In this document: positions 4,001 through 57,800 of the stretch, in pieces
How the letters are laid out: each line of letters begins with the position of its first letter
How positions within the stretch are numbered: the stretch's first letter is position 1
Assembly (NCBI RefSeq): GCF_002113885.1
Contig: NW_018408896.1
Span: forward strand, 186,001-250,000
DNA length: 64,000 nt
DNA from: Mizuhopecten yessoensis
Taxonomy: Eukaryota
Direction: 5' to 3'
Position numbers and translations under genes: made by a program
The notes under the pieces: generated by a model
The model's input: the letters and a program-made list of their open reading frames with translations, nothing else
Told to the model about the DNA's origin: nothing
The model's database searches: none

Positions 4001-5969
4001 AGGTATTGATTGTTACGTCATTGGTTTGTGAGAGTAACGTCAAGAATTTTTGAGGAAACGATGTAATTTTCTCACACAACCAATGACGTAACAATCAATA
4101 CCTGCTCACAAGAGAAGATTACTCTGCAATTGGCAAAGACGGAATTGGGTATGTAACGTTATAACTGTTTATGTGCAGATCGCCCTACGGTGGGGAGTCC
4201 AGAGAGGGTACGCTGTCATACCAAAGAGCTCGAATCCGAAAAGATTAAAAGAAAATTTAAACGTAAGATCATAAGTGTCGTATGCTAGTAATATATGCCA
4301 CGACATATTGGCCTGGAATTCATAACAAGACAATCGTTTGGTATGTGCGTAAAAATATCATCCTTTTTATTAATATTTTTGTGTGTTTTTGCCTCCGGAA
4401 AATATCAGCTGCCACATTTAATTTAGCTTCCAGTGTATGAATGTGTTGACTGATTTTCACAATATTTATCCAATTCCTCCTACTCAACAACATATTCAAG
4501 TAAACAAAATGAAAATACTCAAATAGTAATAAAACATGTTACATCCTAATTACAACAAAGAAATTATATTAAGGGTAATAATGGTACTTCTACATTCCGT
4601 GTCTAGTGTTTTTTGTGGCCGGCGTAAACTGAAAATAGTTAAAATTTGCATCAACGTTACTATTCTCTCTAAAAACAGGAGATACAAAAAAATATCGTGA
4701 TAGATAAGATCATAAATGGGACTCTACATTCGGTTTCGGGATCATGTCGTAAGTATTAATACCAATGCACTGACGAGTGTACGATTTAGGAAAATTTTGA
4801 GAAAGTGGGAATAGAAATGAGTGTATTTTAGTGGATTAAAAAATATTTCTCTTTGATGATTTGCTTAACTTTGATATTAACCTCGCCGTGATTGAGGTCA
4901 AAATTGTCTCCCTTTAGACTGTGTAATGACATAAGTCAGTCAGTCGGCATGAAAGTATACAAATTGATATTATTTGATTAATTAACTAATCCTACCTTTT
5001 TTATACAGATGTTTTTGAGATATAACATTATTTTAACTTGGAAAAGCAAAAAAGTAACACCGTTATGCAGCATACATACAAAGTAACAACAGAGTCAAGT
5101 CTTCGCTACAGTACTTTACATTACAGTACAGTACATTTTGTGTTAGTGAGAAATATAAAAGGATTTTGAATGGAAAAAAATCACAGATGTGTCATACCTT
5201 TAGTCCTATTCAAATGATTTGGCGACAATATCGTACTTATACATACATACCATTATTGTAACTACCTTCTTAAAGATATTATGATCTCAAAAGTGTATAC
5301 CATTTAATTGTTTCTATTGTTTATTAATGAATAAATACAGCCAGAACATTTCTGTTTTGTAGTTATTTGACTTTTCGCTTACTGCCAGAGAAATGGAGCA
5401 AATCTCAGCACTGAACAAAAACCAGAAAGCATATGGATTTGAAGGGTAATAATTAAAAGATAAATCTGCAAGAAATATAGTTTAGTTTCCAAACAAACTA
5501 TACCCGAACCCTCGACCATTGATCGTGATCGGGCTCTAAATAGTACATATATGCACTTCACATTTTATGTTTCTAGACATCAAATAGTCATAATAAATCT
5601 GTATCTTGCAGTTCTATTTTAAAACAGATTAAGAACTATATATTCAATTATTATTTTGTGTAAGGGTGCCATCATTACTGGTATCATTATCTGGTATTTG
5701 TTATGTTCTTAAATGAAAGCTTGAAGTAGTTTTAGTAACATGAAGGGTACATTTCGATTTCTTTTGGTTCATCAAAGCAAGCGTTAATGAATTGTGAAAT
5801 CATGTGTTTTGTTCACTTCAAATTACGATCGACAAAAATAAGCTAATGTTAATACATAATTTCTGTAGCTTATTGAGGTTATTTGTTCTATTTCAGTGCC
5901 AGAAAAAGTCAAAACTACCCATTCAACGAGCCAACCCATATCGAAGAAGGCGGTGCAGCAATCATGTAG
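1027..5969 (+). CDS. Aldo-keto reductase family 1-like protein (exons 2-10; exon 1 not found, probably upstream of window); catalytic Tyr->Phe and His->Gln
   Basis: GT-AG exons 1027-1197, 1538-1654, 1933-2010, 2483-2605, 2799-2905, 3396-3477, 4179-4262, 5363-5445, 5897-5969 join in frame: GYRHIDCAALFKNE...FITSK|IWGT...YLDLLLIQVP...IGVSNFN...NQ|VEVSPY...AYAPLG...IALRWGVQRGYAVIPKS...YPFNE...AAIM*. Typical AKR1 motifs and exon phases. Confidence 0.93.
3959..4145. mobile_element. Foldback/MITE-like palindrome in AKR intron
   Basis: ~75-bp inverted arms: ATTCCGTCTTTG...TCTTGTGAGCAGGTATTGATTGTTACGTCATTGG versus CCAATGACGTAACAATCAATACCTGCTCACAAGA...CAAAGACGGAAT. Confidence 0.75.
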
Positions 5970-40728: not shown

Positions 40729-40884
40729 TGTAACAGGAAAGAGAATAGTGTCCTTCCACTGGGGATCGAACCCTCGATCTCCAGGTTCCTAGTCGGACGC
40801 TCTACCACTGAGCTAAAGGGAGATTCCCTCTAGCTCGAAGCTAGAAGGCGACCTTAATCCTATGTACAATTGAACCCTGCCACA
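40729..40884. mobile_element. Solo LTR (TG...CA, 4-bp TSD) containing a tRNA-like cassette
   Basis: CTAT|TGTAACAGG...CCTGCCACA|CTAT; minus strand reads TAGCTCAGTGGTAGAGCG...GGGTTCGATCCC. Confidence 0.75.
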
Positions 40885-42239
40885 CTATCATTACTTTAGG
40901 TCTTTTGGTTTTAACTTCTTCAAATGAAATTGTTCAAATGCATTAACAAATTCGACTCTTACAACCTTGATTACATATCAAGGAGTTTTATTTTCCCAAC
41001 TTGGTAGTACATGTACTCGATGTCAATAAGCGATGGATATACATGTACTAGCGATGTGTATCATGGCTATATAGGCTTCTTGGAGTCTCAAAAAAAGCTT
41101 TTTGATTACTTAAAATAAAGCCACAGTATTTTCTTGTTTGAAACTTTGTAGTACTTCATGCCACCATGCTAGCTTCTAGTTCTTCAGGAAAAGCTATCCG
41201 AGTGTTTAAGGGATTTTTTTAATTCTATAAACCTCATTGCTAGTAATTCTAGGCCTCTTGGTGTTTTAGAAGGTTCAGTTTGAGTGTTGACATCTTTGAC
41301 CCTGTGACATTAAATAATGGTCAAGGCCGTTTATTTTCTCAAAATCTGTGGTACTTCATGCCTGCAGCAAGCTATCAGCCTTATACATGTATACCATAAC
41401 TCTAGGTCCCTTGGTGTTTCAGATAAAGCTGTGAGCCAAGGTCACAGTCACATTTTCCCACAAAATTTGTAGCATATATGCTAGAAAATTAGTCAAACAT
41501 CATGGCGCTAAGCCTTTTGGTCCTTCAGAAGAAGGCAATCAAGTTGCATTGCAAAGCAGCGTAGGTGAAGACCTCTCTATAGACATATTTTGTTTTGCTT
41601 CACAGAAATTGCAGTTTGTTTTCTGGTTGCAATGGCTTGGCTTTACCGTTTGGGTCAGTGAGCTACAAATCTATCAGTCTATGGAATAAACATCATTTAT
41701 ACCACACTCAGCTAACACAAAGGTGAACATTGGATATATCCTTAAAAAACATAAATAATAGAAATAAGCACATTTTGGGCTGCCTTCAGATGTATAAACA
41801 AAGTTCGGTCAGAAGATAGTGGTCTTCGTTCTCACTGGTCATTCAAGTACATGTACTTATGTAGGGGATTCAAAAGAACAATTATGAGTCTAGTCAAAAT
41901 GGCGGATCATTCAAAACGTCAATATCTGATAGCATACTGTGCAGGTATTTGTCAAGAAAATATGCCTTAAGCAGGCCAAAAGATTATACTCCAATCAAAT
42001 GAAAAATAGCAATACATTGTAATATAAGCATCAGTTCAGTCAAAAAATGGAAAACAGATGATGAACTGTGCACCATGGCATAATCACTATTAGCCCTTAA
42101 GGCAAGGTATCGGGTAAATGTTAGATGACTAATATCCATATTTCACCATGATGATACTCTTGCACCACTCATTAAATATGAAATCATTAATTAGCATCAT
42201 TTGCATTGAGCTGGAAATCCACAGACCTTTTCTAATCCC

Positions 42240-42656
42240 GGAACTGGATATGACCAAAATTTCATAATATTACAGGTAATTGGTTTCGGAACACGATATG
42301 ACCAAAATTTCAAAATATTACAGGTAATTGGTTCGAAACCAGATATGACCAAAATTTCAAAATATTACAGGTAATTGGTTCGGAACCAGATATGACCAAA
42401 ATTTCAAAATATTACAGGTCATTGGTTCGGAACCAGATATGACCAAAATTTCAAAATATTACAGGTTATTGGTTCGGAACAAGATATGACCAAAATTTCA
42501 AAATATTACAGGTAATTGGTTCAGAACCAGATATGACCAAAATTTCAAAATATTACAGGTCATTGGTTCGGAACCAGATATGACCAAAATTTCAAAATAT
42601 TACAGGTCATTGGTTCGGAACCAGATATGACCAAAATTTCAAAATATTACAGGTAA
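42240..42656. repeat. 47-bp minisatellite, ~9 copies, just 3' of the LHPP stop
   Basis: Unit GGAACCAGATATGACCAAAATTTCAAAATATTACAGGTMATTGGTTC. Confidence 0.93.
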
Positions 42657-42832
42657 CTAGCTAAGATTTCTATTTGTCATTACCAGGTAGATCATTCTCC
42701 AGAAGGAGTTGGGCTACAAATCAGTCATATGGCATCATTAGAGACAGATTGAACAACTCAAGTCCTTGATGTGATATGGTAACAACACCAGCAGGGAACA
42801 TGGTTAAGAATCAGGTTAAAAAACAACAGGGG

Positions 42833-45800
42833 TTAGGCAAGTTCTGCAAGGCCATCCCAGGGTTTTCTTGATTTAATCAAAATATCTACTGCCTCTGCCA
42901 GATTCTTCACAATAGCTGATGGTTTGACTGTGGGATGATTCTCATCTTTGGATCTGAAAAAATATATTAAAAAAAAAAAAACAACATTTTTGATAGAAAT
43001 TGCTCAGGGTAGTGACTATTTTTTTTAGTATCAGTGGTTTAAAGTAGACCTTTTGTTGTAACACATAACTTACAATCAACCTTAAAACCCTCTCAGCACT
43101 ATAGTCACCACATAAACATGATTTAGTAAAAACATGTCAGATATAGCTTATAAATTTTGCATAAATGTCAATCAAACTTTTCTATTTTTCTATACGAGAA
43201 AGGATCTGCGATGTTTTATTCCTAACTTTTACACATATTTAATTTAAACACTTTACATCCCCACAACTTCACTATGAATGGCATCACTAACAAAGCCTAT
43301 ACAGCATTGTATTGTCTGTGTGTACCTGCACTCCTCTCATTAAAAACAGAGTCCCTCGCCCCTACTACAAGAATATCACTCAAAAAGTCTCTCTAACCTA
43401 CCTGTATTCGTTTGTGCGGATCAGCACCCTCTCATCCTAGATTCCAGTGCCCCTTTTACATCACTCACAATGTCTCCCTTCCCTGCCTGTATTTACCTGT
43501 GTGGACCAGCACCCCTCTCATCCCAGATACCAATGCCCCCACATCACTCACAATATCTCCCTTACCTACCTGTATTTACCTGTGCGGACCAGCACCCCTC
43601 TCATCCTAGATTCCAGTGCCCCTTTTACATCACTCACAATGTCTCCCTTACCTGCCTGTATCTACCTGTGTGGACCAGCACCCCTCTCATAGCAGATTCC
43701 AGTACCCCTCCTACATCGCTCACAATGTCTCTCTTACATATGTACCTACCTGTATTTACCTGTGTGGACCAGCACCCCTCTCATACCAGATACCATGCCC
43801 CTTTTACATCACTCACAATGTCTCCCTTACCTACCTGTATTTACCTGTGTGGACCAGCACCCCTCTCATAGCAGATTCCAGTACCCCTCCTACATCGCTC
43901 ACAATGTCTCTCTTACATATGTACCTACCTGTATTTACCTGTGTTGACCAGCATCCCTCTCATACCAGATACCATGCCCCTTTTACATCACTCACAATGT
44001 CTCCCTTACCTACCTGTATTTACCTGTGTGGACCAGCACCCCTCTCATACCAGATACCATGCCCCTTTTACATCACTCACAATATCTCCCTTACCTACCT
44101 GTATTTACCTGTGCGGACCAGCACCCCTCTCATCCCAGATACCAGTGCCCCCACATCACCCACAATGTCTCCCTTACCTATCTGTATTTACCTGTGTGGA
44201 CCAGCACCCCTCTCATCCTAGATACCAGTGCCCCCACATCACTCACAATGTCTCCCTTACCTACCTGTATTTACCTGTGTGGACCAGCACCCTTCTCATC
44301 CCAGATACCAGTGACCCTTAATCACTCACAATGTCTCCCTTACATACCTGTATTTACCTGTGTGGACCAGCACCCTTCTCATCCCAGATACCAGTGACCC
44401 TTAATCACTCACAATGTCTCCCTTACCTGCCTGTATTTACCTGTGCGGACCAGCACCCCTCTCATCCCAGATACCAGTGACCCTTAATCACTCACAATGT
44501 CTCCCTTACCTACCTGTATTTACCTGTGTGGACCAGCACCCCTCTCATCCCAGATACCAGTGCCCCTCCCACATCACCCACAATGTCTCCCTTACCTGCC
44601 TGTATTTGCCTGTGCGGACCAGCACCCCTCTCATTCCAGATACCAGTGCCCCCACCATCACTCACAATGTCTCCCTTACCTACCTGTATTTACCTGTGTG
44701 GACCAGCACCCCTCTCATCCCAGATACCAGTGCCCCTCCTACATCACCCACAATGTCTCCCTTACCTACCTGCATTTACCTGTGTGGTACAGTACCCCTC
44801 TCATCCCAGATACCAGTGCCCCCACATCACTCACAATGTCTCCCTTATATTACCTTCCTGTATCTACCTGTGTGGACCAGCACCCCTCTCATCCCAGATA
44901 CCAGTGCCCCCACATCACTCACAATGTCTCCCTTACCTACCTGTATTTACCTGTGTGGTACAGCACCTCTCTCATCCCAGATTCCAGGCCCCTACTACAT
45001 CACTCCCAATGTCTCCCTTACCTACCTGTATTTGCCTGTACGGACCAGCACCCCTCTCATCCCAGATTCCAGGCCCCTCCTACATCACTCACAATGTCCC
45101 CTTACCTACCTGTATTTGCCTGTGTTTACCAGCACCCCTCTCATCCCAGATTCCAGTACCCCTCCTACATCACTCACAATGTCTCCCTTACCTACCTGTA
45201 TTTACCTGTGCGGACCAGCACCCCTCTCATCCCAGATACCAGTACCCCTCCTACATCACTCACAATGTCTCCCTTATATTACCTACCTGTATTTGCCTGT
45301 GCGGACCAGCACCCCTCTCATCCCAGATTCCAGTGCTCCTCCTACGTCGCTCACGATGTCATCTCCTACCATGACGACCTGTAAAGGAACGGGAGCATTT
45401 ATTACCCTCTACTGAAGTGTAGGGCGTACATCCACACCACATGGGAATGTAACATGGATCTAAGCTTGCATCTCCTGTAGTACACAGACTTAAGCTTGGC
45501 ATATACTATAGGGGATGCAAGAAGCATGCTACTCTTCCATGTGGTACATGGCATTATTTAACCTTGAAGATTAAAATTAAGATCTATTGCTTGTCTTGAT
45601 TTATAAAACTGTTACTGAGTTAAAGACAGTCAATTTTATGAAATGCAATAAAGTGAAACTTGTATTATCTGACACTTTGTAAGACACAATATATATCAGT
45701 TAGATTAACCTGTCTAATCTGACACCCTTAGAGACACTATATATATGGGTCAGATTTACCTGTCCACTCTTAAAAATTGTGGTACACAATTCCGTATAAT

Positions 45801-48800
45801 GGTAAAAGTAGACAGGAAGTTTGAACATTTTAGTCTTAATTGCAAGTTTTATTACAAATGAAATTAAAGCATTATGTTATAAAGAACAGGATGTTGGAAT
45901 ATTCAGGATTAACTGCTTATGGCAGTTTCATTGTAAATCTATTTACCACTAAGGGTTTTCATGAGTTCAAGCCTGCCACACATTGCCCACAGTTTAAAGT
46001 TACATGCATAGCCTGACACAAACAGTACCATGAAACATGTATACATGTTATTTTCAATAGTTAAAAACAAAAATCTATTCATTTAATTTCTTGCCATTTT
46101 GATCTCACCTTGTCAGCACTGAGGCCCATGTTCTTCACAGCAGTGTTGAAAAAGATAGCAGATGGTTTTCCTACAATTTCAGCTTCAACATCACAGGCAT
46201 ACTGTAATGTAAACAATTACAAAGTTACCTCCCCTTTGTGTAACCTTTTAGAATATGATAAACAAAAGCAAATTTACTAAACATGTACGTACCTAGTACA
46301 TTTCCTTATATTGTATTTGATATTACCTCAAAATACAACTTGAATTTGTAATGGGGCTCATATAAGTTATCCACAAACATTGTGTCTAGTGCTTGTGATA
46401 TATACACAGTAAACATTTTAATCAAAATATCTTCAAATAGGTAACAAGTGAACAAGGGTTCCAAATGCCCTGTATCCCTCACATGTTTTTCAAAACACAC
46501 ACATCAGACATACTCGGTGAGTGACTTTCACAGTGGCACAAGATTAGATTTACAGCAAGCCACAGGCCAAATGTAACTCCTTTAGGACTTTTAGACAATA
46601 GGCCCAGAGGGCCTGTATCGCTCACCTGAATATTATACTGTACTACAAATATTTCACTCGCAAACTTTGTCCGCTTCATCTGTTAAAATATTATTATAAG
46701 ATTCTATGCTTTTTGGTTCTTGTTTGACATATTTTCCCCCCTGTTACCTTGAAAGTAGGTCAAGGTCATTTTAATTTTCAAACTTTGTCAGGCTCTATCC
46801 CAGGAGGCCACCAGCCAAATATGAAGATTCTATACCTTTTGGTTCTTCAGAAGAAGTCGTTTGAAGAGTTTGACATATTTGACCGCTGTGATCTTGAAAG
46901 TAGGTCACTACGACAGGGTAGATACCGATGGAGGCACGACAACGTCTTGCGGGTCCTAGCGGATATCCTTGAAGTGGAGAGAAGGAAGAAAAGAACTGGT
47001 GTAAGAACAAACCAGGCTGGTATCAAGTTTGTGAAACCAGGGGAGAAAGCCACAGTGAAGCCTCGAAGCACCTCATCCATCTTTGAACGGGCGTCAACAT
47101 GGGAGATGAAGGTTGACCTTGACAGGAAGCTTGTGTTTCCAGGAATAGTGGAAACAACACTGAGGCCTGACATGGTAATCTGGACAGAGCAATCCAGACA
47201 CCTCATCGCCATAGAGCTCACCGTACCATGGGAGGAAGGCTGCGAGGAAGCTCACGAGAGGAAGAAAGCCAAGTATGATGAGCTGATGGAAAAGTGCAGG
47301 AGCAGAGGATGGACAGTATGGCTCTTTCCAGTGGAGGTTGGCTGTAGAGGTTTCCCCGCACAGTCAGTGTGGAGGACACTACGGTCAATAGGACTCACTG
47401 GGAGGGCAAGAGCTACCGCCATCAGACGATTGGGAGAAGCTGCAGAGAGAGCATCGTGCTGGCTATGGCACAAACGAGATGAGCCGATGTGGAAGCCGAC
47501 ATAGACGAGTAGTGGTTTGGCCACCACTACTGACCCACCAGCCGGAGGATGTAGTGATTAAGGGTCGAAACATCTGAAGAGGGCTGGCCATCACCTGATG
47601 ACGTCAAATGAGGCTTCGCGACTAGAATGACAGCAGTGACGGACTACAAGTCAAGGATGTCACAAGATGCAGAATCACCATCATCTGTAAGCAATCATCA
47701 TTTTTCTGAGAAATCAGTGACTTCCAGGAAAGGCTGGATGGAAACTGGGGAAGACCAGTGACGCTGGAGAGACAGATGACATCCAGAAACAGACTGGAGC
47801 AGGGTACTTTGTGTCAGCAACTCGAAGTATAGCTCCCGCAAGGGGGCACCTATATCAAGCTACAGAACAAAGAAAAGAGCAACACCCCCAGAGCCTCCCG
47901 AGAGGGGGGGAGGATGAGAGGCTCACTCGGACAGATCAAACGGAAACGACCAGGACACGGACAAACACAACGATGATCCAAACAACGTTAAGTGGAGAGC
48001 CAGTCGAAGCACGATGCCATTGTGGAAAGATATGCAAGAACAGCAGAGGGCTGAAAATCCATCAGGCAAGGACCAAATGTGGCCATAGGGAGATACTAAC
48101 GCAGCGCACAGATATCAGCAATGAATCTGGTGAGACGCAGGAGGAACTCAGTCAGGAGTCAAACCATAGTACAGAGAGCCTCCAAGCTTCGGTGTCGCCA
48201 GATGGCAGCATTGGTAACTTGAATGAAGCGAGCGCCCATGGTGTTCAAGCAGTGAGGGACAGGAGATTAGACAAAGTGCAGTGGCCCAAGACAAATGACG
48301 AGGCAGCTTGGCGAAATCTTGATCAGGACCTGGAGGCTATTTTGGAGACCACTCTACAGGGGAATGTGGAGAGGAAAGTAGAAGCACTGACGTCAATTGT
48401 GTACAGTGTATGCAAAGAGCGATTCGGAGTGGAAACATCCAGAACACAACCCAGAGCAAAGACAACAAAGGAGAACAGGAGGGAACGTAAGATCAAACAA
48501 CTACGAAAGGAGCTGAGGGAATTAGGAAAGAGGTTTAAAACAGCACCAGAGAGTGAAAAAGTTGGGATACAGCAGATAAGAGACGACCTTAGGGAGACAC
48601 TTCGCCGCCTAAGGAATGCAGAAAGACTAAGGAAGGGAAGGAAGGAGAGAGCGAAGAGAAGAGCAGATTTTGTTAAAGATCCATTCCAGTTCTCAAAAAC
48701 TTTGCTAGGAGCAGAGAGATCAGGCCATCTGGAAAGCTCGAAGGAGGAAGTGGAAGCTCATCTCAAAGGTGTCCATTCAGACAACAGGAGAGCAGAACCT

Positions 48801-51800
48801 TTAGGATATTGTCCAAGAATCTTAGAGGTAGAGGCCCCAAGTGCACCATTGGATACCAAACTTCCTACCTGGAAAGAGATTCAAGATGTGGTGAAAAAGG
48901 CAAGATCAGGATCAGCCCCAGGACCAAGTGGGATAACGTACAGGGTTTACAAGAAATGTCCAAGACTGCTAAGAAGACTGTGGCAGCTAATCTGTAAAGT
49001 ATGGAAGAAAGGGACCATACCGGCGTGCTGGAAGAAAGCAGAGGGAATCTTTGCTCCTAAAGAGAAAGACTCCAAGACAGTTGAACAATTTAGGACCATA
49101 TCGCTGCTGAGTGTCGAAGGAAAGATCTTCTTCTCGATACTTGCCAAGCGCATGACAGCCTACATGGTGGAAAACAGTTACGTCGACACCTCAAGTCAGA
49201 AGGGAGGAATCCCTGGGTTTTCAGGATGCGTAGAACATACAAGCGTCATCAGCCAACTGATCAGAGAAGCCAAGCAGAAAAAAGGTAACCTGACAGTGGT
49301 ATGGTTAGATCTTGCAAACGCCTATGGATCTGTACCACACAAACTGATTGAGGCAGCCCTGGACCATTATCATATTCCGGAGCACATCCGGAAAATGATA
49401 ATGAGCTACTTCGGAGGGATACAGTTGCGGTTTACAGTTGGGGAAAGCACTACAGCGTGGCAAGACCTGGAAAAGGGAATAGTTACAGGATGTACCATTT
49501 CACCTATACTCTTCATCATGGGAATGAATATCATCATCAAGGCAGCAGAGAGAGAAACCAGAGGACCTAGAATGGAGTCTGGCATCTACCAACCAGCCAA
49601 TAGAGGCTTCATGGATGACCTAACGATCACTACCACCACACATGTACAGGCCAGATGGGTCTTGTCCGCGCTGGAGGAGGTAGTTACATGGGCACGGATG
49701 CAGTTCAAACCTCGGAAATCACGTTGCATGATTATGAGGAATGGCAGACTCAGCCGACAGTTTGTACTGAAGGTCCAAGAGGAGGAGATACCTTCAATCA
49801 TTGGCAGCCCCATAAAGTGCCTAGGGAAATGGTTTGACGACACACTCAGTGACAGCCAGAACCACAAGAACACCCAAAGCCAAGTGCGCCAGTGGATGAA
49901 GAAGATCCACAAGTCGGGACTTCCTGGAAAGTACAAAGCATGGATATACCAGCATGGCATGCTACCAAGGCTCACATGGCTGCTGCTACTGTATGAAATA
50001 CCAACCTCAACAGTAGAAGGGTTAGAGAAGATGGTGAATGGGTACCTGCGGAAGTGGCTTGGGGTCCCACCAAGTTTCACATCAGTTGGGCTGTACAGTT
50101 GTTCGGCAGAACTACAACTACCATTCAAATCGGTCGTTGAAGAGTTCAAGGTAGCAAAATGCAGGCTGGTGATGACTCTGAGGGACTCCAAAGACGTGAA
50201 AATCAGCGAGGCAGGGATACAGACAAGAACAGGGAGAAAGTGGTCAGCAAGCACTGCAGTTGGTGAAGCAGAGAGTATGCTCGAGTTGAAGGATATCATC
50301 GGGAATACCTGCGTCGGAAGACAAGGAGTTGGCTTCTCTCATTTCCAGCAGTGGGAGAAAGCAAATACCCAAGAAAGACGGCAAATGGTGCAGAAAGAAA
50401 TCAGAAGGATTGAGGAGGAAAGGAGGAGAGGGAAATCTGTAGAACTCAGCAAACAGGGTGCGTGGACCAGATGGAATCTCCCAGAGAGGAAGATGACGTG
50501 GGCTGAAATATGGAGAATGGAGCCCTTCCGGATATCATTTCTGCTACGATCCGTGTATGACACGCTACCATCTCCTGTTAACCTGCATCAGTGGGGATTG
50601 ACGGAGGATCCTTGCTGCAAGCTATGCGGAGGAAGAGGAACAATGGCTCATATCTTGTCTGGTTGCAAAGAAGCACTACGACAGGGTAGATACCGATGGA
50701 GGCACGACAACGTCTTGCGGGTCCTAGCGGATATCCTTGAAGTGGAGAGAAGGAAGAAAAGAACTGGTGTAAGAACAAACCAGGCTGGTATCAAGTTTGT
50801 GAAACCAGGGGAGAAAGCCACAGTGAAGCCTCGAAGCACCTCATCCATCTTTGAACGGGCGTCAACATGGGAGATGAAGGTTGACCTTGACAGGAAGCTT
50901 GTGTTTCCAGGAATAGTGGAAACAACACTGAGGCCTGACATGGTAATCTGGACAGAGCAATCCAGACACCTCATCGCCATAGAGCTCACCGTACCATGGG
51001 AGGAAGGCTGCGAGGAAGCTCACGAGAGGAAGAAAGCCAAGTATGATGAGCTGATGGAAAAGTGCAGGAGCAGAGGATGGACAGTATGGCTCTTTCCAGT
51101 GGAGGTTGGCTGTAGAGGTTTCCCCGCACAGTCAGTGTGGAGGACACTACGGTCAATAGGACTCACTGGGAGGGCAAGAGCTACCGCCATCAGACGATTG
51201 GGAGAAGCTGCAGAGAGAGCATCGTGCTGGCTATGGCACAAACGAGATGAGCCGATGTGGAAGCCGACATAGACGAGTAGTGGTTTGGCCACCACTACTG
51301 ACCCACCAGCCGGAGGATGTAGTGATTAAGGGTCGAAACATCTGAAGAGGGCTGGCCATCACCTGATGACGTCAAATGAGGCTTCGCGAATAGAATGACA
51401 GCAGTGACGGACTACAAGTCAAGGATGTCACAAGATGCAGAATCACCATCATCTGTAAGCAATCATCAAGGTCATTTTAATTTCAAAACTTTGTCTGGCT
51501 CTATCCTAGGAAGCTACCAGCCAAATATGAAGTTTCTTTAGATTTTAGTTCTTCAGAAGAAGTGTTGACCCCTGTGACCTTGAAACTAGGTCAAGGTCAT
51601 TTTTGTTCTCAAACTTTGTCGGGCTCCTACCAACGAAGCTTTCTGCCAAATATTATGACTTTAGGCTTGTCTCAACTTCAGTTCTTCTTCAGAAGTTGTT
51701 TAAAGGAAAAGTTGACGGACGACGGACACCGCACCATGACATAAGCCCACTTGCATTTCGGGCAGGTGAGCTAAAAATGCAAACAGGTTTTCAAGTATTT

Positions 51801-54800
51801 GGCCTCTCTGAGCAAGAAAGAACTGTAGGCTAAAGTCATCTTTTAGGGCAAACTTGCTTGCTGTCCGTTTGTGCAAGCAATTTGTTACTGACTGAGTAGC
51901 ATTACCCTCAGAAAACATGATTCAAAGCTTTTGACACATTTGACCCTGTGACACTGAAATCATGTTAAATTATGGTCCATCAGTCCAACAGAGTTGATAG
52001 TTCTTCACCCAGTATACAACCAGTAAATGTAGCTAAGCAATCTAGCTGCTTATGCAGCAGAAGATGCTTTATCATCTATTGACATTTGACCCAATGTGGG
52101 TCAAGGTCAATCATTTAGATTTATTGGTAGTGCTTCATCCAAACACTACTGGCAATACATCCTGACCCTAGGCATTTGGTTATTCAGACTTATTTGTTTG
52201 AAGTTTTTTTACACATTTAATTACAGATGTAATCCCTGCGACCTTGAAAGTGGGTCAAGGTCATTCATCTGAATACATTAATAGCCCTCCACCTTTAGAA
52301 TACTACAAACCAAATACCATGATCCTAGATCTAGACCTCTTTGTTATTCAAAAGATGTTGTTTAAATGTTTTCACACCATTGAGCCCTGGGACCTTGAAA
52401 ATAGGTCAATTTCTTTTATTTGAAAAACGTCATAACCCGGCCTCCAACCCATTATAAAATGTACTACTGGTCATCTATTACCAGTATGACCCTTTGCCAC
52501 TTTTATTACCTCCAGAGCACGACTGAATGACCCCACATCTAATACTAAGTTTCCTCCATCTTTGTAATATCTCCTGTCAAAACAAAACATGTAATTATTA
52601 CTTTCCTGTCGGAGTGCATTTTCGGAAAATATCTTTTAATTTTCATGAAGAACATTTTTGAAGTCGATCATGTCTGCTGAATTTTAGTATCTGGTTATAT
52701 TTAAATTATAGATTTGTTTTCGTCCTGATTTAATTGGATCAACAAAAACCTGTCAGTTGACAAAAATCTTTTAACTCATCTTTTGAAATCACTTTTCAAT
52801 AAAAGACACAATCAAAACAGAACAAAAACAATTTGTTTGCTGATTATATTAAAATCAAACTTAAAAATCAAGCAAAAGTTCTGAGTTGGAGATATGTTCA
52901 ATTTTAGGCTCAAATACCCAGTCATTATTCAAGGTTTATCAAAATTCACAAATAGTTATTGTCAGCTAGTTTAAATGCAAAACAGTCAATTGCATGCACT
53001 TATCTGACCATACCCTTTGCCCAGGGAGAAGAGGATGGGCTTATCCAATGATATCAGAGTCTGAAAGGTCTTGTTTAGGTTTGCATAGGAAAACTCATCA
53101 ATGGCATCCCCCACTACCACACAATTGGGATTATCCGTCGCCACATCGCCAAAATCTGCTAATGCACCTGACAGACCCGAAGTTCAGTTAAATGTTATCA
53201 ACATCAATGTTTTTAGTATTCAATAATATATACTTTAGCTGCCATTAAACCCAGTATCCATCCCTAGTGCTAGAAACCCAGTATCTATCCCTAGTGCTAG
53301 AAACCCAGTATCTATCCCTAGTGCTGGAAACCCAGTATCTATCCCTAGTGCTGGAAACCCAGTATCTATCCCTAGTGCTAGAAACCCAGTATCTATCCCT
53401 AGTGCTGGAAACCCAGTATCTATCCCTAGTGCTAGAAACCCAGTATCTATCCCTAGTGCTGGAAACCCAGTATCTATCCCTAGTGCTAGAAACCCAGTAT
53501 CTATCCCTAGTGCTGGAAACCCAGTATCTATCCCTAGTGCTAGAAACCCAGTATCTATCCCTAGTGCTGGAAACCCAGTATCTATCCCTAGTGCTAGAAA
53601 CCCAGTATCTATCCCTAGTGCTAGAAACCCAGTATCTATCCCTAGTGCTGGAAACCCAGTATCTATCCCTAGTGCTAGAAACCCAGTATCTATCCCTAGT
53701 GCTAGAAACCCAGTATTTATTCCTAGTGCTGGAAACCCAGTATCTATCCCTTGTGCTAGAAACCCAGTATCCATCCCTAGTGCTGGAAACCCAGTACCCA
53801 TCCCTAATGCTAGAAACCCAGTATCTATCACTAGTGCTAGAAACCCAGTATCTATCCCTAGTGCTAGAAACCCTATATCCATCCCTAGTGTTAGAAACCC
53901 TATATCCATTCCTAGTGTTAGAAACCCAGTATCTATCCCTAGTGTTAGAAACCCAGTATCCATCCCTAGTGCTAGAAACCCAGTATCTATCCCTAGTGCT
54001 GGAAACCCAGTATCTATCCCTAGGGCTAGAAACCAAGTATCCATCCCTAGTGCTAGAAACCCAGTATTTATCCCTAGTGCTAGAAACCCAGTATCCATCC
54101 CTAGTGCTAGAAACCCAGTATCTATCCCTAGTGTTAGAAACCCAGTATCCATCCCTAATGCATGAAACCCAGTATCCATTCCTAGTGCTAGAAACCCAGT
54201 ATCCATCCCTCGTGCTAGAAACCCAGTATCTATCCCTAGTGCTAGAAACCCAGTATATATCCCTAGTGCTAGAAACCCAGTATCTATCCCTAGTGCTGGA
54301 AACCCAGTATCTATCTCTAAAGTGCTAGAAACCCAGTATCCATCCCTCGTGCTGGAAACCCAGTATCTATCCCTAGTGCTAGAAACCCAGTATCTATCCC
54401 TTGTGCTGGAAACCCAGTATCCATCCCTAGTTCTGGAAACCCAGTATCCATCCCTAGTGCTAGAAACCTATTATTCATCCCTAGTGCTAGAAACCCAATA
54501 TCTATCCCTAGGGCTAGAAGCCTAGTATCTATCCCTAGTGCTAGAAACCCAATATCTATCACTAGTGCTAGAAACCCAGTATCCATCCCTAGTGCTGGAA
54601 ACCCAGTATCCATCCCTAGTGCTAGAAACCCAGTATCTATCCCTAGTGCTAGAAACCAAGTATCTATCACTAGTGCTGGAAACCCAGTATCCATCCCTAG
54701 TGCTAGAAACCCAGTATCTATCACTAGTGCTAGAAACCTAAATTCCATCCCTAGTGCTAGAAACACAGTATCTATCCCTAATGCTAGAAACCCAGTATCT

Positions 54801-57800
54801 ATCCCTAGTGCTAGAAACACAGTATATATCCCTAGTGCTAGAAACCCAGTATCCATCCCTAGTGCTGGAAACCAAGTATCTATCCCTAATGCTAGAAACC
54901 CAGTATCCATCCCTAAAGTGCTAGAAACCCAATATCCATCCCTAGTGCTAGAAACCCAGTATCCATCCCTAGTGCTAGAAACCCAGTATATATCCCTAGT
55001 GCTAGAAACCTAGTATCTATCCCTAGTGCTAGAAACCCAAAATCCATCACTAATGCTAGAAACCCAGTATCCATCGCTAGTGTAGAAACCCAGTATCTAT
55101 CCCTAGTGCTAGAAACCCAAATTCCATCCCTAGTGCTAGAAACCCAGTATCCATCCCTAGTGCAAGAAACCCAGTATCTATCCCTAGTGCTAGAAACCAA
55201 GTATCTATCACTAGTGCTGGAAACCCAGTATCCATCCCTAGTGCTAGAAACCAAGTAGCTATCCCTAGTGCTGGAAACCCAGTATCTATCCCTAGTGCTA
55301 GAAACCCAGTATCTATCCCTAATGCTAGAAAGAAACCCAGTATCTATCCCTAGTGCTAGAAACCTAGTATCTATCCCTAGTGCTAGAAACCCAAAATCCA
55401 TCACTAATGCTAGAAACCCAGTATCCATCGCTAGTGTAGAAACCCAGTATCTATCCCTAGTGCTGGAAACCCAAATTCCATCCCTAGTGCTAGAAACCCA
55501 GTCTCTATCCCTAATGCTAGAAACCCAGTATCCATCCCTAAAGTGCTAGAAACCCAATATCCATCCCTAGTGCTAGAAACCCAGTATCCATCCCTAGTGC
55601 TAGAAACCCAAATTCCATCCCTAGTGCTAGAAACCCAGTATCTATCCCTAATGCTAGAAACCCAGTATCCATCCCTAAAGTGCTAGAAACCCAATGTCTC
55701 CCTAGTGCTAGAAACCCAGTATCCATCCCTAGTGCTAGAAACCCAGTATCCATCCCTAGTGCTAGAAGCCTAGTATCTATCCCTAGTGCTAGAAACCCAG
55801 TATCCATCCCTAGTGCTGGAAACCCAGTATACATCCCTAGTGCTGGAAACCCAGTATCCATCCCTAGTGCTAGAAACCCAGTATCCATCCCTAGTGCTAG
55901 AAGCCTAGTATCTATCCCTAGTGCTAGAAACCCAGTATCTATCCCTAGTGTTAGAAACCCAAATTCCATCCCTAGTGCTAGAAGCCTAGTATCTATCCCT
56001 AGTGCTAGAAACACAGTATATATCCCTAGTGCTAGAAACCCAGTATCTATCCCTAGTGCTAGAAACCCAGTATCCATCCCTAGTGCTAGAAACCCAAATT
56101 CCATCCCTAGTGCTAGAAACCCAGTATCTATCACTAGTGCCGGAAACCCAGTATCCATCCCTAGTGCTAGAAACCCAAATTCCATCCCTAGTGCTAGAAG
56201 CCTAGTACCTATCCCTAGTGCTAGAAACACAGTATATATCCCTACTGCTAGAAACCCAGTATCTATCCCTAGTGCTGGAAACCCAGTATACATCCCTAGT
56301 GCTAGAAACCCAGTATACATCCCTAGTGCTGGAAACCCAGTATACATCCCTAGTGCTAGAAACCCAGTATCTATCACTAGTGCTAGAAACCCAGTATCCA
56401 TCCCTAGTTCTAGAAACCCAAATTCCATCCCTAGTGCTAGAAACAAAGTATCCATCCATAGTGCTAGAATCCTAGTACATGTATTCATCCCTGGATAACA
56501 ACCTTTTTACTTTTCATATAGCTGGAGACTGGGCAGTGTGAGTTAATATATTTTCCACATAAGAAAGTACATTTTGGAATAAGCATTTTCTTTTCAAGCA
56601 CTTGGATAAACTCCCAAGCTTTTCACAGCTGCTCCTTTGACATACATTGTATATATAAAGTATGAAAACTAGTCATTGCAAAATTAACAACATCTTCGGG
56701 CAACTGTGTTTTACTTAACTTGTCTTTGCATGTCTCTATAAAACCCTAAGTGTACTCACTGGGATGTATAAGTAGATGTGGGCGGAGTCCTCTCTCCTTC
56801 AGCACCTGGCACATAGCAGGGATTGGTGGAAAAACTTCCTCTGGTTTCATGTCAGTGAATCCAAGACGTTTCAGTTTGTCCACAAGTACCTGTCTGGTGC
56901 AAGTCGTTTCATTGGTACAGAACCGTACTGGCAGCCCAGCATCTTTTAGTCTGCAAAAAATATCTATAATTAATCAATTGTCTCATGATCGGATGACAAG
57001 ATAAACTGTCAAATATGATTGGCCTGTAAGGTCAGGTAACATCTCTTCTGATAGACTGTCTAACATGTCTGGTCTCTAAAGACAGGTTGTTTCTCCTGAT
57101 AGACTGTCTAACATGTCTGGTCTCTAAAGACAGGTTGTTTCTCCTGATAGACTGTCTAACATGTCTGGTCTCTAAAGACAGGTTGTTTCTCCTGATAGAC
57201 TGTCTAACATGTCTGGTCTCTAAAGACAGGTTGTTTCTCCTGATAGACTGTCTAACATGTCTGGTCTCTAAAGACAGGTTGTTTCTCCTGATAGACTGTC
57301 TAACATGTCTGGTCTCTAAAGACAGGTTGTTTCTCCTGATAGACTGTCTAACATGTCTGGTCTCTAAAGACAGGTTGTTTCTCCTGATAGACTGTCTAAC
57401 ATGTCTGGTCTCTAAAGACAGGTTGTTTCTCCTGATAGACTGTCTAACATGTCTGGTCTCTAAAGACAGGTTGTTTCTCCTGATAGACTGTCTAACATGT
57501 CTGGTCTCTAAAGACAGGTTGTTTCTCCTGATAGACTGTCTAACATGTCTGGTCTCTAAAGACAGGTTGTTTCTCATGATAGACTGTCTAACATGTCTGG
57601 TCTCTAAAGACAGGTTGTTTCTCCTGATAGCCTGTCTAACATGTCTGGTCTCTAAAGACAGGTTGTTTCTCATGATAGATTGTCTAACATGTCTGGTCTC
57701 TAAAGACAGGTTGCCTCCCCTGATAAACTGTCTAACATATAATGTCTCTTAAGACAGGTTGTTTCTCCTGATAGACTGGCTAACATGTCTGGTCTCTAAA

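What the first reader, a model, noticed from the sequence alone, without database searches (positions are those of the whole stretch)
47532..47601. Hammerhead ribozyme core in an unfamiliar topology, bent by a kink-turn, in the 3' UTR of a HERO retrotransposon
Seen: the whole hammerhead core is present (CUGAUGA 47595-601, GAAA 47567-70, GUA^ 47551-53). The helices are in correct register: stem I GUGAU(47554-58)/AUCAC(47590-94); stem II GACCC(47532-36)/GGGUC(47562-66), giving the canonical G10.1-C11.1 pair; stem III GGAUG(47547-51)/CAUCU(47571-75). Stem III continues through a GAA bulge and tandem G.A/A.G pairs into CCAGCC/GGCUGG, the Kt-7 kink-turn pattern. Established: natural types I/II/III are open at one stem and keep CUGANGA joined to stem II. 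Here the chain is open at the A9/G10.1 step, a 3-nt linker joins the distal ends of stems I and II (where the loop-loop contact normally forms), and 1-2-nt linkers join the kinked stem III to stems I and II. Inference: a pseudoknotted hammerhead that type I-III pattern searches would miss, possibly tuned by L7Ae/15.5K-family k-turn binders. I know of no description of it but cannot search the literature. Second copy at 51300-51369.
Basis: partly seen in the sequence, partly recalled or inferred. Interest (0 to 1): 0.93.

Follow-up and report, generated by a model that had tools for sequence, protein, structure and literature searches.

The report
Rearranged hammerhead ribozyme ending a retrotransposon
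A jumping gene found in scallops, mussels, lancelets and fish ends in a conserved RNA that has every catalytic part of the self-cutting hammerhead ribozyme, wired in an order not yet described; whether it actually cuts is untested.

Summary
At 47532-47601 (second copy +3768 nt) every hammerhead core nucleotide and stems I, II and III lie in exact register, in a pseudoknotted order. The same motif follows the ORF in about 60 of 64 related elements that have enough downstream sequence, from lancelet, sardine, scallop, zebra mussel and metagenomes. All helices covary (92% paired vs 63% shuffled and 34-40% slid). N7 varies freely and H17 is G in 1 of 84.

Non-circularly permuted hammerheads are already published (Eckert et al. 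2023, type SGC). The motif is also larger, 47500-47610. The 3' tail after A9 pairs with the ORF end (helix P0), and a hairpin with a palindromic loop sits between P0 and G10.1, which suggests a four-way junction at the chain break. This is type SGC circularly permuted and opened inside its "unbreakable" CUGAnGA block. The k-turn signature holds in 57-70% of members.

Cleavage is untested; only contigs were available. All 12 same-family copies reaching the 5' UTR carry an upstream partial copy with one uniform junction, and 5' ends do not pile up at the cleavage site. Templates therefore span more than one unit with the site intact.

The parts
47500..47507 (+). P0 5' strand (CAU-A-GACG). It overlaps the last codons and the stop codon (47502-47504) of the upstream copy's ORF and pairs with the tail right after A9.
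   Evidence: P0 is 7-15 bp in relatives and starts at offset 0 after A9. It is 91-93% paired with 3-6 pair types per position. It is weak in this copy: 4 + 3 bp.
47508..47531 (+). Hairpin HP between P0 and G10.1 (stem 47508-15/47524-31). The apical loop holds the palindrome UGGCCA (47518-23).
   Evidence: 81-95% paired. 46 of 83 relatives have a palindrome of at least 6 nt at the apex, against 13% in shuffles, with 12 different palindromic strings on six cores.
47532..47536 (+). Stem II 5' strand (G10.1 = 47532). It pairs with 47562-47566.
   Evidence: 92% paired, although these were not pairs in the model. G10.1-C11.1 is GC in 58, GU in 19, and never changes on both sides.
47538..47546 (+). 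Distal helix 5' strand (47538-43) and the non-bulged k-turn strand G-G-A (47544-46).
   Evidence: 94% paired, 6 pairs all covarying. The strand from this helix into stem III ends in GA in 53 of 86.
47547..47553 (+). Stem III 3' strand (47547-52, U16.1 = 47552) and H17 = A47553. The predicted cleavage is between 47553 and 47554.
   Evidence: U16.1-A15.1 is invariant in 79 of 82. H17 is U 36, C 29, A 18, G 1.
47554..47561 (+). Stem I 5' strand (47554-58) and the UAA linker (47559-61) to stem II.
   Evidence: stem I is 96% paired with 4-6 pair types, and it was not modelled as pairs. The linker is 2-7 nt in relatives.
47562..47575 (+). Stem II 3' strand (47562-66), G12-A13-A14 (47567-69) and stem III 5' strand (A15.1 47570 to 47575).
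   Evidence: G12 in 82 of 84, A13 and A14 in 84 of 84.
47576..47589 (+). Bulged k-turn strand (GAA bulge 47576-78, G.A/A.G 47579-80, G47581), distal helix 3' strand (47582-87) and the CC linker.
   Evidence: A 3-nt bulge plus GA, opposite GA, is present in 47 of 83 relatives, and 58 of 83 under a relaxed rule.
47590..47601 (+). Stem I 3' strand (47590-94) and C3-U4-G5-A6-U7-G8-A9 (47595-601).
   Evidence: C3 in 80 of 83, U4 in 83 of 83, G5/A6/G8/A9 in 82 of 83. N7 is U 54, C 12, A 12, G 5.
47602..47610 (+). P0 3' strand (CGUC, then AUG after an AA bulge), directly following A9.
51268..51378 (+). Second, identical copy of the whole ribozyme, exactly one unit (3768 nt) downstream, at the end of ORF 47811-51272.
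   Evidence: window 51262-51383, 96.2 bits.
46906..51468 (+). Head-to-tail 1.2-mer of the element: a 5'-truncated copy (46906-47700) plus a unit-length copy (47701-51468). The ORF has RT, a CCHC motif and a PD-(D/E)xK-type endonuclease.

Best explanation
This is a hammerhead-type self-cleaving ribozyme in a previously undescribed connectivity. It is built into the ORF end and 3' UTR of an RLE-type (HERO-like) non-LTR retrotransposon.

Shown. The strand order is P0a, hairpin, IIa, distal-helix strand, IIIb-U-H17 (cleavage), Ia, short linker, IIb-GAAA-IIIa, k-turn strand, distal-helix strand, Ib-CUGAnGA, P0b. All six helices covary, and the core follows the hammerhead conservation rules.

Inferred. 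The 3D core is the ordinary hammerhead. Stems I and II are tied at their far ends by the short linker and by the distal helix. The distal helix is joined back to stem III through a sharp bend, usually a k-turn, so the helices close into a ring. The backbone break at A9/G10.1 is the crossover of a perfect four-way junction (GA-domain/stem II stacked, P0/hairpin stacked). It is equivalent to Eckert's type SGC, circularly permuted and opened inside block C. Cleavage after A47553 would give a 2',3'-cyclic phosphate and a 5'-OH.

Likely role (about 40%). The ribozyme cuts longer-than-unit transcripts of the head-to-tail arrays at sites one unit apart. The unit RNAs can then be re-joined or circularised, as in retrozymes. 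Reverse transcription of such templates recreates the 1.x-mer arrays. The stop codon lies inside P0/hairpin, so a terminating ribosome should unfold the ribozyme. That would couple cutting to translation; this is inference.
For: The core and helix register are exact in the window. The motif is present after the ORF in Branchiostoma belcheri, Pecten maximus, Dreissena polymorpha, Sardina pilchardus and dozens of metagenome contigs whose C-terminal protein domain is 40-67% identical. Covariation on a MAFFT alignment gives 84% paired vs 59% shuffled and 32-43% slid. On the model alignment it gives 92.3% vs 63% vs 34-40%, with 0 of 500 shuffles reaching the observed value. Stems I and II are 96% and 92% paired, although the model did not treat them as pairs. 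The conservation pattern is that of a catalytic hammerhead: an invariant core, free N7, H17 = U/C/A with 1 G in 84, and G10.1-C11.1 and A15.1-U16.1 fixed. There were no descriptor hits on reverse strands or in shuffles. Type SGC ribozymes, with the same S-G-C order, linker and bridging helix, cleave in vitro (PMC10085705). Evidence on the role: all 12 same-family copies that reach the 5' UTR carry an upstream partial copy of variable length (27 to more than 1,690 nt). They and one further array share a single uniform junction. Head-to-tail repeats one unit apart also occur in sardine, lancelet, zebra mussel and L038.
Against: No cleavage data exist. The only public runs holding the sequence are kept as contigs, which cannot show RNA ends, and those contigs run across the site unbroken. 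No Rfam hammerhead model matches. No natural hammerhead interrupted between A9 and G10.1 has been shown to be active. P0 is weak in this particular family (4 + 3 bp). At most 1 of 71 genomic copies has a 5' boundary at the cleavage site, and most copies read through it, so the templates that were copied were uncut or re-joined there. Cutting 147 nt from the 3' end would seem to separate the ORF from the presumed RT-entry site. The circle or concatemer role rests only on array anatomy, and no array with more than two sites was seen.
Confidence: 0.72

Rival explanations
1. It is a conserved, non-catalytic structured RNA: a docking site for the element's own protein at the stop codon (cis-preference or TPRT initiation, like the pseudoknotted R2 3' UTR). 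Its likeness to a hammerhead would be vestigial or convergent.
For: It sits exactly where RLE elements bind their 3' UTR RNA. Genomic copies were made from templates with the site intact. There is no evidence of cleavage. The fold is compact and pseudoknotted, as in the R2 3' UTRs described in PMC12222951 (abstract listed).
Against: A protein site would not be expected to keep precisely the 13 catalytic-core nucleotides, leave N7 free, exclude only G at position 17, and fix G10.1-C11.1 and A15.1-U16.1 across phyla. Copies with G12A or A6U changes look like decayed copies. The two roles are not exclusive.
Confidence: 0.15
2. It is an active ribozyme whose job is 5' processing. The copy in the upstream partial repeat would free the downstream element from read-through transcripts, as the HDV-like ribozyme does for R2 and the pLTR hammerheads are thought to do for Penelope-like elements. 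It might also promote translation of the uncapped RNA.
For: All 12 same-family copies that reach the 5' UTR have an upstream partial copy, and 5' truncation always retains the 3' UTR, so most carry a ribozyme upstream. The site lies about 260 nt upstream of the next ORF start (47554 vs 47811). There are precedents in Ruminski et al. 2011, as cited in PMC13725137.
Against: It predicts new full-length insertions whose upstream part starts exactly at 47554 (147 nt). The observed upstream parts are 27, 286, about 795, about 988 and more than 1,690 nt, and at most 1 of 71 copies has a boundary at the site.
Confidence: 0.1
3. It is a chance arrangement of short motifs in one young repeat family.
For: Within this genome the family is 97-100% identical, so it shows no covariation on its own. 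The pattern was found by eye in one window of a very large scan.
Against: The motif is found, with compensatory changes in every helix, in relatives from three phyla. There were 0 hits in controls.
Confidence: 0.01

Closest known systems
Type-SGC non-circularly permuted hammerhead ribozyme (HRIMA-1 motif; Eckert, Friedrich, Weinberg & Weinberg, NAR 2023, PMC10085705)
   Same: The 5'-to-3' order is the same: cleavage-site block, GAAA block, CUGAnGA block. A short (about 3-nt) linker runs from stem I to stem II. An extra helix ties the other sides of stems I and II together. There are two pseudoknots in the core, and the core nucleotides are identical. Type SGC was shown to self-cleave in vitro.
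   Different: Here the 5' strand of stem II lies at the 5' end instead of following CUGAnGA, so their 'unbreakable' block C is split at A9/G10.1. The old SGC ends are joined through a k-turn-like internal loop. The new ends are clamped by helix P0 plus a hairpin. The context is the ORF end of an animal retrotransposon, not metatranscriptome sequences found through their association with hairpin ribozymes. The paper mentions no k-turn and no animal or retrotransposon host.
Classical hammerhead ribozymes, types I/II/III (Rfam clan of Hammerhead_1, _3, _II, HH9, HH10)
   Same: All conserved core nucleotides, the G10.1-C11.1 and A15.1-U16.1 pairs, the H17 rule, and three helices in register.
   Different: It is not a simple three-way junction open at one stem. 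The helices cross (pseudoknots) and the chain is interrupted in the core. No Rfam model matches even at E = 10.
Hammerheads of Penelope-like elements and retrozymes (Cervera & de la Pena 2014, 2016, 2020; Lunse et al. 2017)
   Same: A hammerhead carried by a retroelement that occurs as head-to-tail or partial-tandem copies, so that ribozyme sites lie one unit apart. A circular or unit-length RNA intermediate is proposed.
   Different: Those are type I (often minimal, dimer-acting) or type III hammerheads in PLEs or non-autonomous elements. This one is a permuted, clamped hammerhead in an autonomous RLE-type LINE, placed at the stop codon.
HDV-like ribozyme at the 5' end of R2 and other non-LTR elements (Eickbush & Eickbush 2010; Ruminski et al. 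2011)
   Same: A self-cleaving ribozyme encoded by an RLE-type non-LTR retrotransposon.
   Different: It belongs to a different ribozyme class and sits at a different place (3' of the ORF, not the 5' end). Copy 5' ends do not coincide with the cleavage site.
Kink-turn Kt-7
   Same: In the window and in 47 of 83 relatives: a Watson-Crick C helix (stem III), a 3-nt bulge, tandem sheared G.A/A.G pairs, then the NC helix.
   Different: The 3b.3n position varies (G.G in the window). About 30-40% of relatives have another kind of bulge or none. The kinked geometry and protein binding are untested.

Membership tests
Hammerhead ribozyme (catalytic core) | C3-U4-G5-A6-N7-G8-A9 with N7 free | tested here: met
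   C3 in 80 of 83, U4 in 83 of 83, G5/A6/G8/A9 in 82 of 83. N7 is U 54, C 12, A 12, G 5.
Hammerhead ribozyme (catalytic core) | G12-A13-A14 followed by the A15.1-U16.1 pair | tested here: met
   G12 in 82 of 84, A13 and A14 in 84 of 84. The A15.1-U16.1 pair is U-A in 79 of 82 and never varies to another pair.
Hammerhead ribozyme (catalytic core) | The cleavage-site nucleotide H17 is any base but G | tested here: met
   U 36, C 29, A 18, G 1. The descriptor with G allowed found no extra hit. The G17 copy, L078, has further mismatches.
Hammerhead ribozyme (catalytic core) | Stems I, II and III abut the core in register and are supported by covariation, with G10.1-C11.1 conserved | tested here: met
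   stem I 96%, stem II 92% and stem III 95% paired, with changes on both sides in 14 of 16 pairs. G10.1-C11.1 is GC 58 and GU 19.
Hammerhead ribozyme (types I-III) | An unknotted three-way junction open at one stem, recognised by the Rfam hammerhead models | tested here: not met
   the helices cross, and no Rfam family matches at E up to 10.
Hammerhead ribozyme | Mg2+-dependent self-cleavage 3' of H17, giving a 2',3'-cyclic phosphate and a 5'-OH | not testable with these tools
   Only contigs of public runs were available, and contigs cannot show RNA ends.
Type-SGC permuted hammerhead (Eckert et al. 2023) | Block order S-G-C, a short linker from stem I to stem II, and a helix bridging the other sides of stems I and II | tested here: met
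   the linker is 2-7 nt, and the bridging helix is 5-9 bp and 94% paired. Definition taken.
Type-SGC permuted hammerhead (Eckert et al. 2023) | Block C is uninterrupted: CUGAnGA is followed directly by the 5' strand of stem II | tested here: not met
   CUGAnGA is followed by P0b. The covarying partner of the stem II 3' strand lies 5' of the cleavage block.
Kink-turn | A C helix, a 3-nt bulge, tandem sheared G.A/A.G pairs and an NC helix | tested here: met
   The sequence signature is met in the window and in 47 of 83 relatives (58 of 83 relaxed). It is not universal in the family.
Kink-turn | A tightly kinked geometry, or binding by L7Ae/Snu13-family proteins | not testable with these tools
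   No RNA 3D or binding tool is available here.
HERO clade of RLE non-LTR retrotransposons | A single ORF with RT followed by CCHC and a PD-(D/E)xK restriction-like endonuclease, and mostly non-specific insertion | tested here: met
   One search shows RVT_1 and zf-RVT. One search shows invariant C..C..H..C and D, E, K columns in the C-terminal 300 aa. The flanks differ between copies. The clade definition is from PMC4640811.
HERO clade of RLE non-LTR retrotransposons | Phylogenetic placement with reference HERO families (Repbase) | not tested
   No reference HERO sequences were at hand. The host range of relatives (lancelet, fish, bivalves) fits the range reported in PMC9004415.

The most novel reading that the evidence does not exclude
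A hammerhead whose backbone is interrupted inside the catalytic core, at A9/G10.1, by a four-way junction, and whose helices are closed into a ring by a k-turn. It is catalytically active and drives a unit-length or circular RNA stage in the life cycle of an autonomous LINE, which would explain why these elements insert as 1.x-mers. The palindromic hairpin loop would act as a kissing-loop dimerisation site that pairs two template RNAs.
Probability: 0.25. Interest if true: 0.92.

Novelty: new variant of a known kind. Interest (0 to 1): 0.8.

Why it matters
If it cleaves, it shows that the hammerhead fold tolerates a strand break inside the conserved CUGAnGA/stem II block. The authors of the 2023 permutation paper assumed that block could not be interrupted, so pattern searches built on their three blocks miss this class.

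It would also offer a structural answer to a puzzle those authors raised: how the far end of stem III can reach the helix that bridges stems I and II. Here a k-turn sits at exactly that point.

It would add hammerheads to the ribozymes carried by RLE-type LINEs, alongside the HDV-like ribozyme of R2. The distribution is wide, across chordates and molluscs.

Together with the array anatomy, it makes a specific question testable: whether autonomous LINEs can use longer-than-unit or circular RNA templates, as retrozymes are proposed to do. The compact, clamped design may also be useful for engineered ribozymes.

Tried and rejected
1. Rfam, all 4227 families, at gathering thresholds on the whole window and at E up to 10 on 47300-47800 and 47680-47960. 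No ribozyme family matched.

2. I looked for a canonical type I/II/III reading. The second CUGAnGA-like string, CUGAAGA at 47574-80, has no GAAA partner downstream. Rejected by inspection.

3. I asked whether stem II's 5' strand could follow CUGAnGA, which would make this plain type SGC. The tail is not complementary to the stem II 3' strand in any relative, and it pairs with the ORF end instead.

4. Covariation within the window's own family is impossible, because the copies are 97-100% identical.

5. The hypothesis that cleaved RNA is the usual template end is rejected. At most 1 of 71 genomic copies has a boundary at or next to 47554. The 5' ends of truncated copies are scattered.

6. RNA evidence. 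All 24 runs offered are Logan contigs with no recorded library type. The contigs cross the site and close on themselves by about 31 nt. That fits either tandem DNA or circles and decides nothing.

8. Literature. No paper in the searchable library joins hammerhead with HERO. None uses 'type-SGC' apart from Eckert et al..

9. The L7Ae/Snu13 idea could not be tested.

10. About 30 loci failed my strict descriptor. Inspection and the covariance model showed that nearly all carry the motif with one mismatch or a mutated core and look like decayed copies. Only L067, L110 and L112 show nothing.
Full report
OBSERVATION. The core is CUGAUGA at 47595-601, GAAA at 47567-70 and G-U-A at 47551-53. Stem I is 47554-58/47590-94. 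Stem II is 47532-36/47562-66, with G47532-C47566 as the G10.1-C11.1 pair. Stem III is 47547-52/47570-75, including A15.1-U16.1. A further helix, 47538-43/47582-87, is separated from stem III by a GAA bulge and two G.A pairs. An identical copy lies 3768 nt downstream. No Rfam family matches, either at gathering score on the whole window or at E up to 10 locally. The minimum-free-energy fold recovers only the nested part, namely the distal helix and stem III.

CONTEXT. The motif starts 28 nt after the stop codon of a 5'-truncated copy (46906-47700). That copy is joined head to tail to a unit-length copy (47701-51468) whose 1153-aa ORF (47811-51272) has RVT_1 and zf-RVT domains. Its C-terminal 300 residues carry invariant CCHC and D/E/K columns of the restriction-like endonuclease type. 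That is the architecture of RLE-type LINEs. The HERO label fits the host range of relatives and the non-specific flanks, but I did not test it by phylogeny. The genome holds at least 71 copies of this family that include the site, all 97-100% identical, so the family itself gives no covariation.

COMPARATIVE TEST. Homologues of the ORF's C-terminal half are abundant. I fetched DNA around homologues from four named species: Branchiostoma belcheri, Pecten maximus, Dreissena polymorpha and Sardina pilchardus. I also fetched DNA around four homologues from metagenome or Logan contigs. Separately, 80 metagenome loci were found with the protein alone, without any reference to the RNA.

The same motif sits directly after the ORF in these loci. 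A descriptor asking only for the core and stems I-III in this order hit 47 of 89 loci. Every hit was on the ORF strand, giving 43 distinct sequences. There were 0 hits on 210 kb of reverse strands and 0 in 4.2 Mb of shuffles.

Of the 64 metagenome loci with at least 150 nt beyond the ORF, 34 pass the strict descriptor. Most of the rest carry the motif with one helix mismatch or a mutated core (G12A, A6U, G17), as expected for decaying copies. A covariance model built from 42 sequences found 92 matches in 100 sources. It missed only L067, L110, L112 and L116, and L116 has a descriptor hit. The window's own genome gave 150 matches, which is the cap. Its top matches fall next to the 5' ends of a roughly 75%-identical family, so at least two subfamilies carry the motif.

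COVARIATION AND CORE. On the plain MAFFT alignment, 84% of cells pair, against 59% after shuffling and 32-43% with partners slid by 1-3 columns. Thirty-eight of 40 pairs change on both sides. On the model-based alignment (86 distinct rows) 92.3% pair, against 63% and 34-40%. The covariation score is 0.68, against 0.19 and 0.07-0.09, and 0 of 500 shuffles reach it.

The model cannot encode pseudoknots, so stems I and II were not pairs in it. They are nevertheless 96% and 92% paired, with four to six pair types per position.

The core behaves as a catalytic hammerhead core should:
- C3, U4, G5, A6, G8, A9, G12, A13 and A14 are each kept in at least 80 of 83-84 sequences.
- N7 is free: U 54, C 12, A 12, G 5.
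- H17 is U 36, C 29, A 18 and G only once.
- G10.1-C11.1 is GC or GU and never changes on both sides.
- A15.1-U16.1 never varies to another pair.

This pattern is hard to explain except by selection for hammerhead chemistry.

First, the chain is not simply open at A9/G10.1. In nearly every relative, the nucleotides immediately after A9 pair with the last codons of the ORF, with no offset. This closing helix, P0, is 7-15 bp long and 91-93% paired, and every position covaries. In the window P0 is weak: GACG 47504-07 with CGUC 47602-05, then CAU/AUG across a small loop.

Second, a hairpin (47508-31) sits between P0 and G10.1 with no linkers. Read together, the strands are P0a into the hairpin, the hairpin into G10.1, C11.1 into G12, and A9 into P0b. 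That is the strand pattern of a perfect four-way junction. The tandem G.A domain can stay stacked on stem II while P0 stacks on the hairpin. This is my inference about why a break at that step could be tolerated.

Third, the hairpin loop is a palindrome (UGGCCA here). Across relatives the strings are built on UGAUCA, UGGCCA, UGUACA, UCAUGA, UGGAUCCA or GACGUC, among others. Forty-six of 83 have a palindrome of at least 6 nt, against 13% in shuffles, with 12 different strings on six cores. Self-complementarity is kept while the letters change, which points to loop-loop pairing between two RNAs. This is a lead, not a finding.

Fourth, the stop codon lies inside P0a or the hairpin in 37 of 45 sequences whose frame could be anchored, a median of 16 nt before G10.1. 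A terminating ribosome should therefore unfold the clamp.

K-TURN. The signature is a C helix (stem III), a 3-nt bulge, G.A/A.G pairs and an NC helix. It holds in the window and in 47 of 83 relatives, or 58 of 83 under a looser rule. Some members have a plain bulge on the other strand or none (L049, L100, L094, L101). A sharp bend between stem III and the distal helix therefore seems to be what is required, and a k-turn is the usual solution.

The geometry makes sense. The distal helix has to return from the far end of stem III to the far ends of stems I and II, to which it is joined by 0-3 nt.

RELATION TO WHAT IS KNOWN. Eckert et al. 2023 (PMC10085705) described and validated non-circular permutations. 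Their type SGC has the same S-G-C order, the same roughly 3-nt linker from stem I to stem II, and a helix tying the other sides of stems I and II together.

The element's motif is type SGC with the old 5' and 3' ends joined through the k-turn loop, and with new ends opened between A9 and G10.1. That opening lies inside the block those authors assumed cannot be interrupted. They also noted that they could not see how the far end of stem III reaches the bridging helix. Here a k-turn sits at that point.

Their paper and supplements mention no animal genome, no retrotransposon host and no k-turn. No paper in the searchable library links hammerheads with HERO, and none reuses the term type-SGC. Within this scan, note s1-528012 describes the same motif on another piece of this genome and reaches the same reading. 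I saw that note only after my own analysis.

FUNCTION. What the genome shows:
- Copies end at a fixed 3' site (...AATCATCA, give or take a few nt) next to unrelated flanks.
- Truncated copies begin at scattered positions.
- At most 1 of 71 copies has a boundary at the predicted cleavage site.
- All 12 same-family copies that reach the 5' UTR are preceded by part of another copy: 27, 286, about 795, about 988 or more than 1,690 nt.
- Those 12 and one further array (13 in all) share the same junction...AATCATC(A/G)|TTTTTCTGAG, with no filler.
- No same-family copy starts at unit position 1.
- Head-to-tail repeats one unit apart are also seen in sardine, lancelet, zebra mussel and L038.

The RNA that gets copied is therefore longer than one unit and contains the junction, with the ribozyme site intact or re-joined.

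This argues against a pure 5'-processing role of the R2 or Penelope kind. In that scheme, transcripts of a 1.x-mer are cut at two sites one unit apart, the unit RNA is re-joined or circularised, and reverse transcription for more than one round recreates a 1.x-mer. It is equally compatible with the ribozyme acting as a switch that removes RNAs from the template pool. I put the first scheme at about 40%.

Public reads could not decide. All runs offered are contigs, which cross the site and close on themselves, as either tandem DNA or circles would.

VERDICT. Catalysis is strongly suggested by the conservation pattern but has not been shown.

Noticed in passing
window 47718-47800 (5' UTR of the unit); also L031 about 60-130, L036 about 4560-4680, L038 about 4810-4900: The 5' UTR begins with a run of three or four tiny hairpins with 3-4-bp stems (CCAG/CUGG-type) and purine-rich hexaloops (GAAAGG, GGAAGA, GAGAGA). 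They follow a conserved CAGUGAC(U)UCC string that recurs in the scallop, sardine and metagenome elements and, as a partial repeat, in lancelet. No Rfam family matches, and there is no HDV-like ribozyme.
   Followed up: partly
window 47516-47523 and the equivalent hairpin loops in L034, L036, L040, L042 and others: The hairpin between P0 and stem II has a palindromic loop whose letters change while self-complementarity is kept (UGAUCA, UGGCCA, UGUACA, UCAUGA, UGGAUCCA). This looks like a kissing-loop dimerisation signal.
   Followed up: partly
L039 401-4336 and 4639-4763: A more distant lineage has a NADAR domain (PF08719) fused to the retrotransposon ORF. It carries the ribozyme about 340 nt after the stop codon instead of directly at it.
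   Followed up: no
window 46760-46857, 51466-51563, 51591-51688: The 1.2-mer is inserted in a tandem repeat of about 125-130 bp (TCAAGGTCATTTTAATTT...). The element's last three letters (TCA) are shared with the target, so the 3' junction may involve microhomology.
   Followed up: partly
window 53104-55500, 42191-42748, 43377-45335: Three separate minisatellites lie nearby: 86 copies of a 27-nt unit, 9 copies of a 47-nt unit, and 83-86-nt units. The last of these is already noted by the scan as exon-derived (s1-568242).
   Followed up: no
window 40753-40822 (-): There is a tRNA-like sequence just at Rfam's threshold (29.4 vs 29 bits) with several non-standard pairs. It is possibly a tRNA-derived repeat.
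   Followed up: no
window 47903 and 47700: Contigs from four public runs differ from the window in two ways. They carry 3, 6 or 9 extra G after 47903, which is a length-variable G run near the start of the ORF. They also read G instead of A at the tandem junction base 47700.
   Followed up: no
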